DNA of 26,443 nt, taken from NCBI GenBank assembly GCA_001179505.1, contig CDMY01000729.1:1-26443 (forward strand). The letters run 5' to 3'. Of this stretch, positions 713 through 20,717 are shown in pieces. Made by a program: the position numbers and the translations under genes. Position 1 is the first letter of the stretch. Each line of letters opens with the position of its first letter. This DNA comes from Vitrella brassicaformis CCMP3155. Lineage: Eukaryota > Protista > Chromerida. Below the pieces are notes generated by a model that saw nothing but the letters and a program-made list of their open reading frames with translations, searched no databases and was not told the origin of the DNA.

Positions 713-820
713 GTCTGTGGTCGGCGTTCTCTTTCCTGCCTGTGACTATTGACTCATGGAACCTGACCTTCTGCAGCCCCCTCCTGCATTGAAGGGGGAG
801 GGAGCGACATTGCGTTGTCC
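713..820 (+). repeat. Dispersed repeat family A, copy 1
   Basis: Aligns ungapped to 14202-14309 over 108 bp with 17 mismatches by eye, and to 8018-8100 with an internal deletion. The core is CCCTCC..CATT(G/C)AAGGGGGAGGG. Confidence 0.85.
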
Positions 821-1042
821 TCGTGAACATCTGCTCTCATGTGCCGTCACTCCAATCACTCATCAAAAACGGCCGATTCTCGGCTTCTGGACCAGTTGCA
901 CCGCTCATGACTGAGTCCTTTTTATCCGCTCTCCCTGGATTCACGCAAAATACGTCATCGCCTGTTTCTGAGACATTGATGAGTGTTGGAACAAAATAGT
1001 AGGAAAAGTCGCTAATCAGCGCGCTTTTTTTTCTCATCGTAT

Positions 1043-4000
1043 ATGTGTAAAACACGACAGAGCTGCGTCCTTGTCTGGGCGATTTTCATGATCAGCCCCT
1101 CCTTCGTCTGCGGACGAAACCAGGAGAATATCCTCCGCGGCTATTCTGAAGATGCCAGGATCGCGTCCCATTTCGCCTATATCCACCCACAACCGGAGGA
1201 GTCATTTGTCTCGCCCTTCACCTCCATTATTATGCGACCTGGTGCGCTGCTCTGGAACGACCAAGGACCGCTACAGCAAGTGGTCAGAGAGTCAGTTGAA
1301 GTGGTGATTGAAGGAGAGCAAAGTGGCATCAGGGAGGCCTTGACGACCATCAGCCGGGACAATGTGACGATTGTATTTGACGTAGGGGGTGCCTTTGTCC
1401 CCGGTGAGCGGGTCACAGTCTCTGTGAAGGAAGGCATTACTCTCGTGCCAATCGACCAGCAGCATGGTGGTGAGCGGGAAGTGCTGGGTGCCTTCTCGTG
1501 GCGATTCACCATCGCGTCAAGAAGGACAGCTGTACACTATTTCCGCGCCATGAGAGAGCTGGCATCCACTCGGAGCATGATGGAAGCCCGCATCGGTGGC
1601 GCGGGCGAAGATGAAAAGAACAGACTTCTGACGGACTTCAAGCATCGTGATGCCAGACGCGAGCTGGGTAGGAAAAGGAAGAAGGCGGTGCAGTCACTCT
1701 GGTTTATTTCTCTTTCCAGGGGTCTATTGGTCATCCCTGCCCGAGAATTCGACAGCAACCGCCAAGCAGAGGGTCATCAAGGCCTACAAAACGCTCCCTG
1801 AGGACTATCCGGCTGTCGATGTGTTGGTGCCGCCAGTCAAGGGGAAGACGGCCGACGGGTAATAGCGCTGCTTGCCTATCACGCAGAGACGCGACGACGC
1901 TGATTCATCTTCAGTTTCATCGTGGTTGCCCCTCTCCGCCACCCGGACGTATCGGTGCACCAGTACCTTCTGATCATAGACGAAAATGGAGAGCCAATAT
2001 GGTGAGAGCGCGACATGAAGGCCCCGCCCCGTCTTTTTACTTATCATCCCTCTCTGCGTGTGCTGTAGGTTTGACCGGTTCCCAAATGCTAATGACGGGT
2101 GGAACGGCTGGTCCACACGAGATTTCAAAGTTCAGGATAATGGACTGCTGTCGTACATATCTGCCACAGGTACGCACAAGCGCCCACGTTTTATCTATTT
2201 GCATAGACGCACATGTGTATACAGGTGGGTGGTCTGTGTTGGACCATTCGTACGAGGAGGTGCGTCACATCCGGCCCAAGAACGGATACATCACCAACGA
2301 CCACGACATGAAAATACGAGAAGATAACCATGTAACGCGTCGCAACAACACGTACTGCGACGCCTACCCGTGAGTACGCAGTGCAAGACACGTCCGTCTC
2401 GCTGGCTGCATGCAGGTATTGCTCTTGGCCTACGACCACCGCGGGAACGTGAATTTCCTGTGGCGCGGGACGCAGGTCACTAATGTTCTGGGATTCGTAG
2501 TGCAGGTGAGCTACGAATCTGACCAACGCTGCGTTGCATGTGTCTGCCGCTGTGCAGGAACTCGATGACGAAGACAACCTCGTGTGGCAGTGGAATGGCT
2601 GGGTGGGATGACGAGAGATGATAAACTTGTGGCTAAAACAAGACTGAAAATGGCGTGTTTACTATCGTCTCTCCCATGTCAGGACCACATGCATGGCGCT
2701 ATGCAGGAGATTCAGAACACGACAGGACAGGGATTCTTTGACGGAGAAGGATTCTTTGACCAACTGCAGTATGTCAAACGAAAGAGAGAAATTGTTGTGG
2801 GTGCATTATCATAATTTAGTGCAAATTCTGTCGCGTGGACACCCGACGGCCACGTGCTGGTCTCTCTCCGGCACCTCTCACAAATAATCAAAATCAACAG
2901 GAAAACGGGAGCCATCATGTGGAAACTGGGTACAGACGTGTATGGGTACACACATACATGTTACATGTCTGAATAATGACGTGCGCGCGTTCAGGTGGTA
3001 TCGATAGCGACTTCAGCTTTGAAGGTGATGACCCTGGCCCCTCGTGGCAGCACGACGCCAGGCTACACGCAGGGGGTATCCTGACAGTTTTCGACAACGG
3101 AAGCGAAAGGCGCCCGCCTTGGTTAAGTCAAAACATACACGTGTATGTGAATGCATTCGTACGCTTTGGTTGCAGGTCGCGGGCGGTTGAGTACGAGCTT
3201 GACCAGAAAAAAATGGTGGCCAAGAAAATTTGGGAATATAGGGACAATCCTGACAGATTTGGAGTCGCCATGGGCGGATTTGATGTAAGTTCAGAACAGG
3301 CATCATCGAAGAGAGGTGCTACTCTTTGCGTCTCGTAGTATCTCGAGAATGGCAATCTGGTGGTGAATTTTGCTGGCGTTGAGCCCGACACGAACCCCTT
3401 CTACACAGAGGTCACACGGAGGGGGGAGAAGGTGCTGGAGCTGTCTGTCGAACCCGGTAGGTACGCATGCATCTGCGGTGCGGATACGTCTATATGTCCT
3501 TGCATGCACGTGTATGCTCACGTCCAGGGATGGCGTATCGTGCGATGAAGTACCCTTGGTGGGGCGTGCCGTCGACCAGACCGCAGCTCGTGATGGACGA
3601 AAAGAATGCCTCCCTTCATTTCAGTTGGAACGGGGCCACACACATCCATGAATGGAGGGTCCGTACGTACATACGTCTAACATGGAGTATCCTATCGTAT
3701 CCTGCTGCTGTTGCATGCAGGTGTATGGTGGCTTGGATCCCGAAACAAGGGACCTCATCACCTCTATCCCTAAGAAGCAATTCGAGCACTCCATCCTACT
3801 TGCGGAAACACCGTAAGCCTCACCTAGGCCTATGTGTGTGTTGTCCATCTACTTCCCATGGCTGTGTGCTGTAGCCACTCCCCGGTCAACTCCTGTCTGT
3901 ATTATCGCGTTGAGGCCATTGACATAGAGCACAGAGTCAACAGAACGAGCGCCACCTTACTGTCACCCTGGTGCTCCAGCCTGGGCGCCATGTGTCTCAT

Positions 4001-4563
4001 GGACGACGCAGAAAAAGAAGACTGCGCGGAGGACAAACCCTCTCTCGATGCCAAAGAGTGCAAGTCTCGCGGCTGCTGCTACCGGCCCCCCGCAGCGAGC
4101 AGTAAAGATGGTGTGCCATGGTGCTTCAGGCCGCGTCAGAGGGCACCTAATGGTGCGTGTGCGTCGGGAAGGGGGCGGGCAAATGCCAGTTGGAAAGGGA
4201 TACGGAGGGAACAATGTGTGGCACAAGGTGCGTGCTGGCGAGAAACGGACGAAGTGGGAGTGCCATGGTGCTTTCATGCCGGCGATACGTGCAGGCAAAC
4301 AGACACCACGAGGCATAGAGCGTGAGTCCACACGAGAGTATACGACGCACATGTATCTTGAGGTGTGTCGCGCAGGATTGATTGCGGTTACAGAGGCATC
4401 CACCCAAAAGAATGGTCAGTTACGCACGCAGCAGAACAGGTCAGTATGCCTTCACTGTGTCGCTCTGTGTCGCAACAGCATATCTCGCGGCTGTTGCTGG
4501 AGCAGCGAGCAGGAGTCGTGCTCTCTACCAACTGCAGACAATGCCTGGTCGTCCCGCTTTTGA
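1043..4563 (+). CDS. Secreted aryl-sulfate sulfotransferase-like protein (signal peptide, Ig-like domain, ASST domain, 3 trefoil domains); 17 exons, about 845 aa
   Basis: Hand-spliced exons: 1043-1667, 1720-1858, 1915-2001, 2069-2169, 2225-2331, 2416-2505, 2558-2602, 2683-2768, 2820-2929, 2995-3121, 3176-3284, 3339-3456, 3528-3658, 3721-3812, 3875-4321, 4376-4414, 4479-4563. They total 2538 nt, all introns are GT-AG and the frame stays open. ASST motifs: YLLIIDENGEPIW, NDHDM, QLHANS, SLRHLSQIIKINRKTG, WQHDAR, TVFDNG, AYRA, LHFSWNGAT. Trefoil motifs include RGCCY...GVPWCF. The N-terminus is hydrophobic (MCKTRQSCVLVWAIFMISPSFVCG). The extreme C-terminus is the least certain part. Confidence 0.9.
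3988..4563 (+). other. Three tandem trefoil (P-type) domains at the C-terminus of the first ASST gene
   Basis: Domain 1: CLMDDAEKEDCAEDKPSLDAKECKSRGCCYRPPAASSKDGVPWCF (6 Cys). Domain 2: CASGRGRANASWKGIRREQCVAQGACWRETDEVGVPWCF (4 Cys). Domain 3, after splicing two introns: CRQTDTTRHRAIDCGYRGIHPKECISRGCCWSSEQESC (6 Cys, divergent end). Confidence 0.85.
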
Positions 4564-5074
4564 CGCCGATCTGCGCTTGTCAAGATACGAGCTGACTGCG
4601 CAAAAGGGCCGGGTGAGACAGGGCTTGTTCGTGGTGGTTTGTGTTCGTAACATGGAAGGAAAGGTACTTCCACGAATTTGTGGGGGAGGGGATGGATTTT
4701 CCCTCCACCTACACTGCGTATTCCTGGGACAGAACTCATGAGTGACATTTACGTGAACACAAGTGATGTGGCAAGTGTTCTCTTTCGAAAGAGGGGAAGC
4801 AGAACACCTACACTCTGGCTGTGAAGGAGAACAGTCCAGCACACTTCTGCATGTACGCAGACTGCGCAAGCAACATCAGCAGACGGATTCCCTGAACACA
4901 ACAGGCTCTGCCAACGCTATCACCATGCCAAGTCACACATGCACACCTCACATCACACGCACGGCCCTGCCGGCACTTTCCTCAAGCTGTGATGCCGTCA
5001 GCCACCTTCTTTGATCAAAGATGCCTTGTTCGCTCAAGGATGCACGTGTAGTGAACGACACCTACATCATTCAC

Positions 5075-7620
5075 TTACGTACAGGCCGCTGAGGCAACGA
5101 CAGTCGACCGATCCATCTCTTCTCCCTTTGCGTCAATTGCCACAGCTTGAAAGTACATGCAATGCTCGCTTGCTGAACCAGGGACGTCGATCCAGTGTTC
5201 AAACTGTGTCTTTGGCATCTCCTCCAGCACCTCTGCCGGCTCGTCTGTGGCTCCAATCAGTATCCGCCATTTGCTTACTTCAGTAGCCCCGTTCCAGCTG
5301 AAGTGCAAGCGAACCGTCTTGTCTGGATTGTTGTTGTCCAGGAGAGCTGTGGGCTTCCAAGAGGGAAATCCGTGCCAGTCCGCCTTCACGGCGCGATATG
5401 CACGACGTCCTGAGTGCATTGTCAGTAGGGCTTGACTCTTTGCGTTGGTCTGCGTTTTGCACAGAGAAATATCCAAGGCGGGATCCTGTCGGTTTCTTTT
5501 TTCACATTGTTTGCTTGACCTCGATGTATATAGGATTGAAATTTCCCCCCAACACACGACCTGGGCCGATGACTCGATTGCCATTCGGCAAGCGCCGGTA
5601 GCTGCCCCATGAATGGGCCTTGACACCTATTTCATACGAGCCCACTAACGCTGCCACGGTTGGACGCCCCTGACGGTCAAACTCAAGCTTGTAGTCAACA
5701 GCACGGGAGCTGTTGTAAGAGGGATAGTTGATGGGGACCTGATCAGGATTCTGGCCAGCATTGTCAAAAACGGTGATTCGATTGCCACCGAGAGCCCTTA
5801 TGTCGTGTTGTCCCATGAAACTGCCATTGGGATCGTCGATAATTTTGAAGTTCCCACTTTCGCCTCCCAGCCGCCACTCAATTTTGCCGGTATCGCTGTA
5901 ATCCGAAAGGCAGTATGAATCCGATCGATGTATATGTGCTGTGCTACCTACACACTGACGTACCGGTTGATCTTAATTGCCTGTGAGAGCGCTCGCAGAG
6001 AGAGTATGATACCCTTGTCATCTGTCTCCTCCAAAGAGTTAGCATCTGATACACACAATACGCGTGAACGACGCAAACATACACGGACAGATTGAATGTC
6101 ATTCACGTACGTCCTAGGTCCCAAAAGCCGCCTTTATGCTTCTTCTGCTTTATATATCTCCTATGGGCAATGAAAGATGTCTCCCAGAAGGCACTCGGTA
6201 TGTGATCCCAGGACCTCCACTCAAACACCACGTCACCTTCAAAGACCACATACGAGTATGTCTATAGAGGACATATGCGGAAACTTACAAATCAAGTGCC
6301 TATATTCTATTTACTTGCCGGTGAGACCTCCTGTATGACAATGCCCACAGTCCATGTTTCCTCACCACCATCCTGCAGGTCCGGACGAATTTTCGTGGTG
6401 TCCAGCGGCTGCAAGTCATACCTGAGGGGCAAGAGGCGTGCTGGCTGATAGTCTGTCAAGCTCATCATATTTCTCAAGTCAGGACGGACTGACCCGAAGA
6501 GTAAGCCATTGCCATTCTTCGTGAGTTGAAATTCGTGACTATCGATGCCCTGTCCGTGCTGCGCAGAGAACGAAGCCGTCTCCTTGTAATCAGGGCCAAC
6601 AACACGGATAAACGGCCCTTCCCTACTGAAGACGAGCTGCCCCTGAGGCGTTGGTGAAAAGAGTAGAAAGCTGTTCTCCGTGGCGAAGACGGGATCGCCC
6701 TCGGACGTCATGATGATGCCATTATTGGGGCTACTCCATAGGAAAACGTACCCAGGCGCTAACTGGGACAAGTCACCCGTCCGGGCTATGTGCATGCGAG
6801 GGTACACCTTCGGAAGTGTGCGATAAGCAGAGTTGGGGGCAACGAACCTGCCGTCAGCATCACAACTGAGGCCGTCATTACAACGAAAGCCATCAGTCTG
6901 TGTTTCCAACTCATCCCATGTCTCATTCTTCGAGATGCCATCCAGCCAATACATGCCTGTGGCCTCGTTAAGCAATTCCAAAGTCTCAGGGTCCGTTTGC
7001 CCCTTATCCACTCGGGGTTGCGCCGCCTTGTGTCCGCTGTAGGTATCCAGGTTTCTCCACGACATCGTGAAATTCCATGCAGCAGCAGGCAGGATATCTC
7101 CCTCCGTCGTCTCTATACCAGCCTTGACACTCACAAACACCCTCTCTCCAGGGGCGAAAATATCAATTGGCTTGAAGAGCACAGTGCGTCCATCATCCAG
7201 TAGAAGCGCCTCTCCACTTGACCGGTCTCCCGACAGGTCCCCTGAAACTTCAATCTTGTCATGAATCGTATCCTCCCTAATACCACCCTGCGACCTGAAC
7301 CCGATGGTTGTGAAGGGCGAGACGAGGACAGCGTTGGGGAGCGGGTGAGCATAGACAAACGGGGTATTTCTCCACAAGGTTGCCAAATTAGGCGACAGCC
7401 CTGCGTCTTTGTGGATCGTCGTGTCATGGTCTCCCCTGAGTTTTCCTCCTCTCGCTTTGACTTCTTTTGCTGGGTCTAATCCCATCGCTTGCAGAGCAGG
7501 TAACAGCTGCTCGGTGTTGCGTCGAGCAGCCTCCGGGGCACTGATTGCAGCAGCCTCCTCCATAAGCCTCCATGCGAACAAGATGCAAACCAAAGCGAGG
7601 GAGAGGAGACCTCGGACCAT
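5075..7620 (-). CDS. Secreted aryl-sulfate sulfotransferase-like protein (signal peptide, Ig-like domain, ASST domain); 5 exons, about 754 aa; paralogue of the gene at 1043-4563
   Basis: Hand-spliced exons: 7620-6315, 6236-6111, 6045-5964, 5895-5520, 5449-5075. They total 2265 nt with GT-AG introns. Motifs: YRTLP, IDSHEFQLT, FEWRSWDH, LGHANS, SLRALSQAIKINRDTG, GQHDIR, TVFDNA, AYRA, LHFSWNGATEV. The N-terminus is hydrophobic (MVRGLLSLALVCILFAW). Confidence 0.9.
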
Positions 7621-7820
7621 CCTCTCCTACGTGAGGTAGATACATGAACGGGCGACGTGTATCATTTTATTTCACACGTCCTTCAAGTGTATCTAAGTCA
7701 CTGCCCGAAAGGCCTGCTACCTAAGCTGGCCTCCTGGCTGATCTCCAAAGTCCTTTTAAGGCCCGCGGACACAGACACAGACACAAAACACGGAGTTACA
7801 ACAGCACTGTCTGAGAGCAA

Positions 7821-20055: not shown

Positions 20056-20717
20056 CACCCCGTTGAAGCCTCTTCCCCTGGTCGGGCAATAAAATTTCTA
20101 AAACGTCCCAAATGTGCCGAAAAATATTCAAAAGCCGGGAAACCGCCGAAAAATATTTAAAACCAAAATATATCGAAAATTTGAGGAGAAGCTTTAAGGC
20201 GATGACCNNNNNNNNNNNNNNNNNNNNNNNNNNNNNNNNNNNNNNNNNNNNNNNNNNNNNNNNNNNNNNNNNNNNNNNNNNNNNNNNNNNNNNNNNNNNN
20301 NNNNNNNNNNNNNNNNNNNNNNNNNNNNNNNNNNNNNNNNNNNNNNNNNNNNNNNNNNNNNNNNNNNNNNNNNNNNNNNNNNNNNNNNNNNNNNNNNNNN
20401 NNNNNNNNNNNNNNNNNNNNNNNNNNNNNNNNNNNNNNNNNNNNNNNNNNNNNNNNNNNNNNNNNNNNNNNNNNNNNNNNNNNNNNNNNNNNNNNNNNNN
20501 NNNNNNNAGGAAAGGCTATTTTGAGGCTTGTTCTAGCCATTGAAAACACGTCCAGAGCCTCTTCACTTCGCCGCCTCCAAACCAGCCATCTCTATTTGAA
20601 AACTTCGCAAACCCCTCAAAAAATCAAAGGAGTAGTTTTAAAAAATTGCAAAAAAAAATAATAAGGGAGTAATTTTGAAAAAAAATCAAATCAAAGGGAG
20701 GAGGCTTCAACAGGGTG
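20056..20717. mobile_element. Non-autonomous DNA transposon (MITE-like) with 24-bp TIRs and an 8-bp TSD
   Basis: Left TIR CACCCCGTTGAAGCCTCTTCCCCT (20056-20079) and right TIR 20694-20717 match at 21 of 24 positions. CTTCCCTC is duplicated at 20048-20055 and 20718-20725. The interior is AT-rich and contains the assembly gap. Confidence 0.88.
20208..20507. other. Assembly gap (300 N)
   Basis: Run of N in the sequence. Confidence 1.

What the first reader, a model, noticed from the sequence alone, without database searches (positions are those of the whole stretch)
1043..4563. Secreted arylsulfotransferase fused to three trefoil (P-type) domains
The spliced protein reads signal peptide, Ig-like domain, ASST catalytic domain, then three trefoils. 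ASSTs are PAPS-independent enzymes that move sulfuryl groups between phenolic donors and acceptors. They are best known from the bacterial periplasm and from fungi. Trefoil domains are known from TFF1-3, sucrase-isomaltase/acid alpha-glucosidase and zona/mucin-type proteins, and TFFs bind glycans. I do not know of this combination. Inference: an extracellular sulfotransferase tethered to wall, mucus or host glycans, doing sulfation outside the Golgi/PAPS route. Six N-X-S/T sequons (NVT, NST, NTT, NAS, NRT, NAS) fit passage through the secretory pathway.
Basis: partly seen in the sequence, partly recalled or inferred. Interest (0 to 1): 0.82.

Follow-up and report, generated by a model that had tools for sequence, protein, structure and literature searches.

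The report
Secreted sulfotransferase with trefoil tail
A coral-associated alga (Vitrella brassicaformis) expresses a 17-exon gene for a probably secreted, bacterial-type PAPS-independent sulfotransferase that ends in three trefoil domains, a combination found only in this organism and not yet studied.

Summary
Window 1043-4563 (+) is a 17-exon, 845-codon gene of Vitrella brassicaformis CCMP3155. It is already deposited, with automatic annotation only, as CEM31604.1 / UniProt A0A0G4GN27 "P-type domain-containing protein".

- **One transcript:** RNA-derived contigs from several runs splice all 16 GT..AG introns. They join the sulfotransferase exons to the trefoil exons.
- **Domains:** Pfam gives ASST (PF05935, 2e-31) and three trefoils, each above the cut-off on its own.
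- **Catalytic site:** the equivalents of E. coli AssT His436, His356, Asn358 and Arg374 are conserved.
- **Closest structure:** Streptomyces Cpz4 (TM 0.8), which sulfates a sugar hydroxyl.
- **Closest relatives outside Vitrella:** secreted Ignavibacteriota-type proteins built Big_5–ASST–CBM4_9–T9SS tail. The trefoils sit where those proteins carry a carbohydrate-binding module.
- **Family size:** the genome holds at least 45 loci of this family, six of them with trefoil tails. The scan had already flagged four trefoil-fusion findings on other pieces of this genome.
- **Rarity:** I found no ASST+trefoil protein outside Vitrella and no paper on it.

Secretion, sulfotransferase activity and glycan targeting are inferences, none assayed. 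This is a new variant of a known enzyme kind, of moderate interest.

The parts
1026..4900 (+). Transcribed region as far as seen: 5' end of transcript contig L051 at 1026; the 3' UTR runs past 4900
1043..1667 (+). Exon 1: start codon, signal peptide (1043-1114), N-terminal beta-sandwich (1172-1513), helical linker (1529-1663)
1720..1858 (+). Exon 2; the ASST domain starts here
1915..2001 (+). Exon 3
2069..2169 (+). Exon 4
2225..2331 (+). Exon 5; holds the near-invariant His (P0151 H329, codon 2302-2304), the likely equivalent of E. coli AssT His252
2416..2505 (+). Exon 6
2558..2602 (+). Exon 7. The intron after it (2603-2682) is retained in contig L051 and spliced in X7
2683..2768 (+). Exon 8; its last two bases begin the split codon of the His that matches AssT His356
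2820..2929 (+). Exon 9; Asn (2824-2826) and Arg (2869-2871) that match AssT Asn358 and Arg374; PF05935 at 27.5 bits for this exon alone
2995..3121 (+). Exon 10; WQHD motif with the predicted sulfo-histidine nucleophile (codon 3051-3053, matching AssT His436)
3176..3284 (+). Exon 11
3339..3456 (+). Exon 12
3528..3658 (+). Exon 13; end of the propeller and start of the C-terminal beta-sandwich (SWNGAT motif)
3721..3812 (+). Exon 14; C-terminal beta-sandwich
3875..4321 (+). Exon 15; end of the beta-sandwich, trefoil 1 (3993-4124, six Cys), trefoil 2 (4158-4271, four Cys), start of trefoil 3 (from 4290)
4376..4414 (+). Exon 16 (39 nt); middle of trefoil 3 (IDCGYRGIHPKE)
4479..4563 (+). Exon 17; end of trefoil 3 (to 4521), a short tail and the TGA stop

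Best explanation
This is a real, expressed nuclear gene of Vitrella brassicaformis. It encodes a soluble secretory-pathway enzyme of the PAPS-independent arylsulfate sulfotransferase (ASST) family, from the Cpz4-like branch. The parts in order are: a cleavable signal peptide, a Big_5-like beta-sandwich, a helical linker, the ASST beta-propeller with its full histidine-based catalytic set, a C-terminal beta-sandwich, and three trefoil (P-type) domains.

Inferred mechanism: a ping-pong transfer. A sulfuryl group passes from an aryl-sulfate-type donor to the conserved His (model residue 483, P0151 H468), and from there to an acceptor hydroxyl.

The trefoil triplet sits where the nearest bacterial relatives carry a CBM4_9 carbohydrate-binding module and a T9SS tail. 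It most likely acts as a lectin-like module that holds the enzyme on glycans of the cell wall, mucilage or host mucus, or that presents them as acceptors.

The gene belongs to a family of at least 45 loci in this genome, most likely acquired from FCB-group bacteria. Six of these loci carry trefoil tails.

Shown here: the gene structure, its transcription as one mRNA, the domain content, conservation of the catalytic residues, and the restriction of the fusion to Vitrella in the libraries searched. Inferred: secretion, sulfotransferase activity, glycan binding, and the identity of donor and acceptor.
For: - Splicing and a single transcript.
- The ATG at 1043 lies inside transcript contig L051, which starts at window 1026. 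It gives the N-terminus MCKTRQSCVLVWAIFMISPSFVCG, with a charged start, a hydrophobic core and small residues at -3 and -1. All four full-length paralogues also start with hydrophobic leaders.
- Pfam: ASST and three trefoils.
- AF2 model: mean pLDDT 78.4, with the propeller and both sandwiches mostly above 90.
- Foldseek: Cpz4 (9KF6/9KF4) at E 1e-31 and TMt 0.80-0.83; E. coli AssT at E 1e-15.
- phmmer alignment to 3ELQ places P0151 H412, N414, R429 and H468 on AssT His356, Asn358, Arg374 and His436. The 4P04 chain, an H436N mutant by its PDB title, reads QN where 3ELQ reads QH at that position, which fixes the numbering.
- In a 44-sequence alignment H412, N414 and H468 are invariant, and H329 and R429 are at least 90% conserved.
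- The roles of these residues, and Cpz4's preference for a sugar hydroxyl, are taken from review PMC13426309.
- The sister bacterial proteins are built Big_5, ASST, CBM_4_9, Por_Secre_tail in that order and come from Ignavibacteriota/Melioribacteraceae MAGs.
- Tree: the six Vitrella sequences form one group (SH-aLRT 98), sister to that T9SS-tailed group.
- Trefoil 1 keeps the Asp before Cys2 and the Trp before Cys6, the only two side chains that contact GlcNAc-alpha1,4-Gal in TFF3 (PMC7221086).
- Elsewhere, trefoils are attached to carbohydrate-active enzymes: GH31, GH15 and PMT.
- Five further loci in this genome have collinear ASST and trefoil exons.
Against: - There is no assay of any kind.
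- I had no signal-peptide predictor. The deposited model starts at the second Met and has no leader.
- The trefoil part of the model is of low confidence (pLDDT 35-70).
- Trefoil 2 lacks Cys2 and Cys4, and its Asn at the ligand position lies in an NAS sequon. Trefoil 3 lacks the ligand Trp.
- AssT Thr501 aligns with a Met here, though the alignment is weak at that point.
- No natural aryl-sulfate donor is known in this organism's surroundings, and most ASSTs have no known physiological substrate.
- Trefoil domains can also serve for protease resistance or protein-protein contacts.
- The word-index search failed to list known paralogues (P0006, P0045), so its silence on other organisms is weak evidence.
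Confidence: 0.6

Rival explanations
1. The enzyme is a secreted ASST that acts on small soluble phenolics, for detoxification, sulfur scavenging, or remodelling of sulfated algal or coral metabolites. The trefoils do not choose the substrate. They only stabilise the protein against proteases, cross-link it, or retain it in the wall.
For: Most characterised ASSTs transfer sulfate between small phenols. Trefoil peptides are compact and disulfide-rich. Only one of the three trefoils keeps both TFF3 ligand residues together with all six cysteines. Most paralogues in the genome have no trefoil, and a non-trefoil paralogue nests among the trefoil-bearing ones, so the tail is dispensable for the family's core role.
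Against: The closest solved relative, Cpz4, prefers a sugar hydroxyl. The sister bacterial proteins carry CBM4_9 at the same position. In other organisms trefoils are attached to carbohydrate-active enzymes.
Confidence: 0.25
2. The propeller has lost transferase activity or changed its function, for example to a binding protein or a hydrolase acting on sulfated or other ligands. The protein would then work mainly as an extracellular adhesin or lectin.
For: The family has expanded to at least 45 loci, which is typical of surface or adhesion families. The residue at the AssT Thr501 position differs. Identity to characterised ASSTs is low: 26-27% to Cpz4 and 13-14% to AssT.
Against: The nucleophile His and three sulfate-coordinating residues are invariant or nearly so across 44 homologues, including this protein. 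The fold match to Cpz4 covers the whole enzyme.
Confidence: 0.1
3. The fusion is an artefact: a chimeric gene model joining two genes, or bacterial contamination of the assembly.
For: The closest relatives of the enzyme part are bacterial.
Against: There are 16 spliceosomal GT..AG introns, removed in RNA-derived contigs that run from the first exon to beyond the stop. Exon 15 carries both the enzyme's C-terminal sandwich and trefoils 1-2 in one open frame. Five paralogous loci have the same order of parts, and in one of them all three trefoils lie in a single exon.
Confidence: 0.02

Closest known systems
Cpz4, the Streptomyces sp. PAPS-independent sulfotransferase of caprazamycin biosynthesis (PDB 9KF4, 9KF6)
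   Same: It is the best sequence and fold match. phmmer gives E 2e-41 over P0151 224-664. Foldseek gives E 1e-31 and TMt 0.80-0.83. The match covers the propeller and the C-terminal beta-sandwich, and the WQHD and HxNS motifs are shared. Cpz4 sulfates a sugar hydroxyl (PMC13426309).
   Different: Cpz4 is a 472-residue bacterial enzyme of a biosynthetic gene cluster. In the alignment it has no counterpart of P0151's N-terminal Big_5-like domain or trefoil tail. Identity is only 26-27%.
E. coli CFT073 AssT (PDB 3ELQ, 3ETS, 3ETT, 4P04-07)
   Same: It shares the beta-propeller ASST fold and has an N-terminal beta-sandwich. The equivalents of His436, His356, Asn358 and Arg374 are conserved.
   Different: It is periplasmic and acts on small phenols. 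Identity is about 13-14%. Its N-terminal domain belongs to a different family (Arylsulfotran_N). It has no C-terminal binding modules. Thr501 is not conserved here.
Ignavibacteriota/Melioribacteraceae secreted proteins built Big_5–ASST–CBM_4_9–Por_Secre_tail (for example P0153, P0154, P0156)
   Same: These are the nearest relatives outside Vitrella: 28-32% identity over 71-76% of the query, N-terminal domain included. They form the sister group in the tree. The layout is the same, with a carbohydrate-binding module after the C-terminal sandwich.
   Different: They are bacterial and intron-less, and are exported by the type IX system. Their C-terminal module is CBM4_9, not trefoil.
Trefoil factor peptides TFF1-3 (PDB 6V1C, 6V1D, 1PSP, 2PSP)
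   Same: They share the P-type domain signature, with E 1e-8 to porcine TFF2. Trefoil 1 keeps the six cysteines and the ligand Asp and Trp of TFF3.
   Different: TFFs are small free-standing animal mucus lectins. Here three domains are appended to an enzyme in an alveolate alga. Trefoil 2 has lost the Cys2-Cys4 pair, and trefoil 3 has lost the Trp.
Trefoil-bearing carbohydrate-active enzymes: animal and fungal GH31 alpha-glucosidases, chytrid GH15 glucoamylase, and a PMT-type mannosyltransferase of unrecorded origin
   Same: The trefoil is used as an accessory module on an enzyme.
   Different: The catalytic partner here is a sulfotransferase, not a glycosidase or glycosyltransferase. I found no such pairing outside Vitrella.

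Membership tests
Arylsulfate sulfotransferase, PAPS-independent (Pfam PF05935 / PF14269) | Match to the family HMM above the curated cut-off | tested here: met
   PF05935 at 109.8 bits (cut-off 24.2) and PF14269 at 86.5 bits (cut-off 27) on P0151, which is identical to the window's codons. Exon 9 alone gives 27.5 bits.
Arylsulfate sulfotransferase, PAPS-independent (Pfam PF05935 / PF14269) | Beta-propeller fold of solved ASSTs | tested here: met
   The AF2 model has the propeller mostly at pLDDT above 90. Foldseek matches Cpz4 at TMt 0.80-0.83 and E 1e-31, and AssT at E 1e-15.
Arylsulfate sulfotransferase, PAPS-independent (Pfam PF05935 / PF14269) | Catalytic histidine that is transiently sulfated (E. 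coli AssT His436) | tested here: met
   P0151 H468 (window 3051-3053) aligns with His436 of 3ELQ and is invariant in 44 homologues. Its role is taken from PMC13426309.
Arylsulfate sulfotransferase, PAPS-independent (Pfam PF05935 / PF14269) | Sulfate-coordinating residues His252, His356, Asn358, Arg374 and Thr501 of AssT | tested here: inconclusive
   His356, Asn358 and Arg374 align with H412, N414 and R429. H329 is near-invariant and is only inferred to match His252. Thr501 aligns with a Met, in a weakly aligned stretch.
Arylsulfate sulfotransferase, PAPS-independent (Pfam PF05935 / PF14269) | Sulfuryl transfer from an aryl sulfate donor without PAPS | not testable with these tools
   This needs an enzyme assay.
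Trefoil (P-type) domain, Pfam PF00088 | Match to the family HMM above the cut-off, three times | tested here: met
   The three domains scanned separately give 44.7, 34.0 and 33.8 bits against a cut-off of 21. A genome six-frame scan hits window 3993-4133 and 4176-4277.
Trefoil (P-type) domain, Pfam PF00088 | Six cysteines, which pair 1-5, 2-4 and 3-6 in known trefoils (established knowledge) | tested here: inconclusive
   Trefoils 1 and 3 have six Cys with the usual spacing. Trefoil 2 has four, with Cys2 and Cys4 lost together, which removes one whole disulfide. The same holds in the close paralogue P0152. The pairing itself was not determined, because the model is weak there.
Trefoil (P-type) domain, Pfam PF00088 | TFF lectin residues: Asp or Asn before Cys2 and Trp before Cys6 | tested here: inconclusive
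   Trefoil 1 has D690 and W723, so both are present. Trefoil 2 has N744, inside an NAS sequon, and W772. Trefoil 3 has D792 but Ser in place of the Trp.
Trefoil (P-type) domain, Pfam PF00088 | Binding of a glycan | not testable with these tools
   This needs a glycan array or a binding assay.
Bacterial Ig-like domain Big_5 (PF13205) | HMM match in the N-terminal domain | tested here: not met
   P0151:20-150 has no Pfam hit at E <= 1. The region folds as a confident beta-sandwich. The homologous region of paralogue P0045 hits Big_5 just below the cut-off (22.9 bits against 23.6) and bacterial relatives hit it above (P0156 33.3 bits, P0154 25.7 bits). So the domain is Big_5-like by homology, not by a direct match.
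Secretory-pathway protein | N-terminal cleavable signal peptide present in the mRNA | tested here: inconclusive
   The ATG at 1043 is in transcript contig L051. The first 24 residues look like a signal peptide by inspection, and the paralogues have similar leaders. No predictor was available, and the deposited model starts at the second Met.

The most novel reading that the evidence does not exclude
Vitrella uses lectin-tethered, PAPS-independent sulfotransferases outside the cell to sulfate glycans of its own wall or mucilage, or of coral mucus. The sulfate would come from environmental or self-made aryl sulfates. This would be a eukaryotic route to sulfated glycans that bypasses the Golgi/PAPS pathway, built from a horizontally acquired bacterial enzyme and a trefoil module.
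Probability: 0.2. Interest if true: 0.8.

Novelty: new variant of a known kind. Interest (0 to 1): 0.5.

Why it matters
ASSTs are valued as PAPS-free sulfation catalysts, yet the natural substrate and role are unknown for most of them. A eukaryotic branch of at least 45 loci, some carrying lectin-type tails, gives a natural experiment on how these enzymes are aimed at targets. It suggests carbohydrate acceptors, as for Cpz4. It is also a clear case of a bacterial enzyme domesticated by an alga, with introns, a signal peptide and a swapped binding module. If glycan sulfation outside the cell were shown, it would add a second route to sulfated glycans in eukaryotes. It could also bear on how this coral-associated alga interacts with mucus.

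Tried and rejected
- **Exon-by-exon scans:** Pfam and PDB searches of single exons gave only weak ASST hits, because the pieces are 30-45 residues long. The deposited protein P0151, returned by the cluster look-up, replaced them.
- **Joined model:** I did not send the joined 845-residue model to any search or fold tool. The first 15 residues, which hold the start of the signal peptide, were read only from exon 1 by reference.
- **Context look-up:** The look-up of encoding contigs on P0151 returned nothing.
- **Literature:** searches for 'arylsulfotransferase + trefoil' found one paper that merely holds both words (not read), and 'Vitrella + arylsulfotransferase' and '9KF4' found none.
- **Word-index search:** The search for homologous proteins scored only 8000 candidates and missed known paralogues. 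I do not rely on it for absence.
- **Model coordinates:** these were not available, so I could not check whether the catalytic residues cluster in three dimensions.
- **Other trefoil loci:** ORFs at five further trefoil loci (C249, C414, C27, C625, C542) gave no partner domain and have no ASST exons nearby.
- **Rejected readings:** I rejected the chimeric gene model and bacterial contamination. A plastid bipartite leader was considered, because this alga has a complex plastid. I did not pursue it: the mature protein begins directly with the conserved beta-sandwich, and the disulfide-rich trefoils fit the secretory route.
Full report
**What is there**

The window is contig C729 of a 72.7-Mb, 1064-contig assembly. 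The cluster look-up names the organism as Vitrella brassicaformis CCMP3155. It names the gene product as CEM31604.1 / UniProt A0A0G4GN27, "P-type domain-containing protein", 830 aa, encoded on a 26,443-base contig. That name is automatic annotation. I found no paper on it.

**Gene structure**

I laid contigs of four public runs on window 800-4900.
- Three runs (X1, X2, X7) behave as RNA. Their contigs skip sixteen GT..AG segments of 51-84 nt.
- One run (X6) is unspliced DNA.
- X7 record 16, of 3274 nt, runs from 1044 through every exon to beyond 4900.

So the sulfotransferase exons and the trefoil exons are on one transcript. This includes the 39-nt exon 16 (4376-4414).

A JGI transcript contig, L051, shows the same junctions and starts at window 1026. 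The ATG at 1043 is therefore inside the mRNA. L051 retains intron 7 with a scaffold gap, while X7 splices that intron. All 830 residues of the deposited protein P0151 equal the window's codons. The deposited model merely starts at the second Met (window 1088) and so loses the leader MCKTRQSCVLVWAIFMISPSFVCG.

Exon 15 alone encodes the end of the enzyme's C-terminal sandwich plus trefoils 1 and 2 in one open frame. The fusion therefore does not depend on any splice.

**Domains**

- Pfam on P0151 gives PF05935 at 2e-31 (residues 233-568), PF14269 at 2.8e-24, and Trefoil in 3 stretches at 3.9e-23.
- Scanned singly, the trefoils score 44.7, 34.0 and 33.8 bits against a cut-off of 21.
- The AF2 model was built on a 44-sequence alignment. 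Its mean pLDDT is 78.4 and its pTM is 0.75.
- The model shows an N-terminal beta-sandwich (29-142), a helical linker, a propeller (225-575) and a second beta-sandwich (586-665), all but the linker confident. The trefoil tail is poorly modelled.
- The N-terminal sandwich has no Pfam hit of its own. The same region hits Big_5 above the cut-off in bacterial relatives, and weakly, below it, in paralogue P0045 and the neighbouring gene.

**Catalytic apparatus**

The review PMC13426309 gives the E. coli AssT mechanism: ping-pong transfer through sulfo-His436, with His252, His356, Asn358, Arg374 and Thr501 around the sulfuryl group.
- phmmer aligns P0151 H468 with His436. The H436N mutant chain confirms the numbering.
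- It aligns H412, N414 and R429 with His356, Asn358 and Arg374.
- In my alignment of 44 homologues, H412, N414 and H468 are invariant, and H329 and R429 are at least 90% conserved.
- Thr501 aligns with a Met, in a weakly aligned stretch.
- The best solved relative is Streptomyces Cpz4: phmmer 2e-41 over residues 224-664, and Foldseek 1e-31 with TMt 0.80-0.83.
- According to the same review, Cpz4 preferentially sulfates a sugar hydroxyl rather than a phenol.

**Trefoils**

- Trefoil 1 has six Cys, and so does trefoil 3.
- Trefoil 2 has four Cys. Cys2 and Cys4, which pair with each other in known trefoils, have been lost together, here and in the closest paralogue.
- In TFF3 only Asp20 (before Cys2) and Trp47 (before Cys6) touch GlcNAc-alpha1,4-Gal with their side chains (PMC7221086).
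- Trefoil 1 keeps both of these residues.
- Trefoil 2 has an Asn inside an NAS sequon, plus the Trp.
- Trefoil 3 has the Asp but no Trp.

**Relatives**

Within the genome:
- The N-terminal exon finds 45 places in the genome (the gene's own locus included), and PF05935 finds at least 36.
- Five loci besides this one have collinear ASST and trefoil exons: C272, C336, C395, C534 and C791.
- Four of these are deposited as proteins with ASST and trefoil by Pfam: P0005, P0006 and P0045 with three trefoils, and P0152, whose deposited model shows only two.
- In C395 all three trefoils lie in one exon.

Outside the genome:
- An exhaustive HMMER search of 1.84 billion representatives with exon 15 gave 213 hits. 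Among the best 150, only the four Vitrella proteins hold an ASST domain.
- From the ASST side, the only hits with PF00088 were from Vitrella. The next best hits are bacterial proteins of 28-32% identity, built Big_5, ASST, CBM_4_9 and Por_Secre_tail in that order. They come from Ignavibacteriota/Melioribacteraceae MAGs.
- The ESM Atlas neighbours are all bacterial ASST clusters.
- A quick ML tree puts the six Vitrella sequences in one group (SH-aLRT 98), sister to the T9SS-tailed bacterial group. A non-trefoil paralogue nests among the trefoil-bearing ones.
- The sampling for that tree is biased towards top hits and it has no proper root. So a bacterial origin is likely, not proven.

**Interpretation**

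Shown:
- The gene is real and expressed as a single mRNA.
- It combines a Cpz4-like ASST, with an intact catalytic set, and three trefoils.
- The combination recurs in this genome and was not found elsewhere.

Inferred:
- The protein enters the secretory pathway. The reasons are the leader, the many disulfides, the sequons, and the absence of a hydrophobic C-terminus.
- The protein transfers sulfuryl groups by the sulfo-His mechanism.
- The trefoil tail replaces the bacterial CBM as a glycan-targeting module.

Three observations support the third inference:
- The position of the tail matches that of the bacterial CBM.
- Cpz4 takes a sugar acceptor.
- Elsewhere trefoils are attached to GH31, GH15 and PMT enzymes.

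The main rival keeps the enzyme but gives the trefoils only a stabilising or retention role, with small phenolics as substrates. The donor in nature is unknown.

**Novelty and score**

This is a new variant of a known kind: a known enzyme family with a new accessory module, in a new eukaryotic, horizontally acquired and expanded setting. It is already in public databases but has not been described or assayed. The scan had already flagged four trefoil-fusion findings on other pieces of the same genome. I score interest at 0.5.

**Rule compliance**

I did not send the joined spliced model to any tool. Searches used single exons by reference or database protein ids. The script only mapped codons to coordinates and compared them with P0151.

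Noticed in passing
window ~5075-7649 (-): A convergent neighbouring gene is another Big_5-like + ASST paralogue without trefoils. Its product is 711 aa on transcript contig L051. That contig merges both genes, so their 3' ends abut or overlap.
   Followed up: partly
window 1043 vs 1088: The deposited model CEM31604.1 starts at the second Met (1088) and lacks the signal peptide. Transcript contig L051 starts at 1026 and contains the upstream ATG at 1043, which is preceded by an in-frame stop.
   Followed up: yes
window 2603-2682: Intron 7 is retained, with a 10-N scaffold gap, in JGI transcript contig L051. It is spliced out in the X7 contig.
   Followed up: partly
L021 3885-3935 (G000:C272, minus strand): The closest paralogue's deposited protein, P0152, ends before trefoil 3. 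tblastn finds the last trefoil-3 exon downstream at 82% identity, so the 3' end is probably mis-annotated.
   Followed up: partly
window 20209-20507: A run of N (assembly gap) flanked by A-rich low-complexity sequence. This explains the GC dip in the composition profile.
   Followed up: yes
G000 contigs C249, C414, C27, C625, C542 (L046-L050): Further trefoil-domain loci have no ASST exons nearby. Their partner domains were not identified.
   Followed up: partly
whole genome G000: There are at least 45 loci with the N-terminal domain of this family and at least 36 PF05935 hits. This is a large expansion of a bacterial-type ASST family in a eukaryote. Some copies contain stop codons and may be pseudogenes.
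   Followed up: partly
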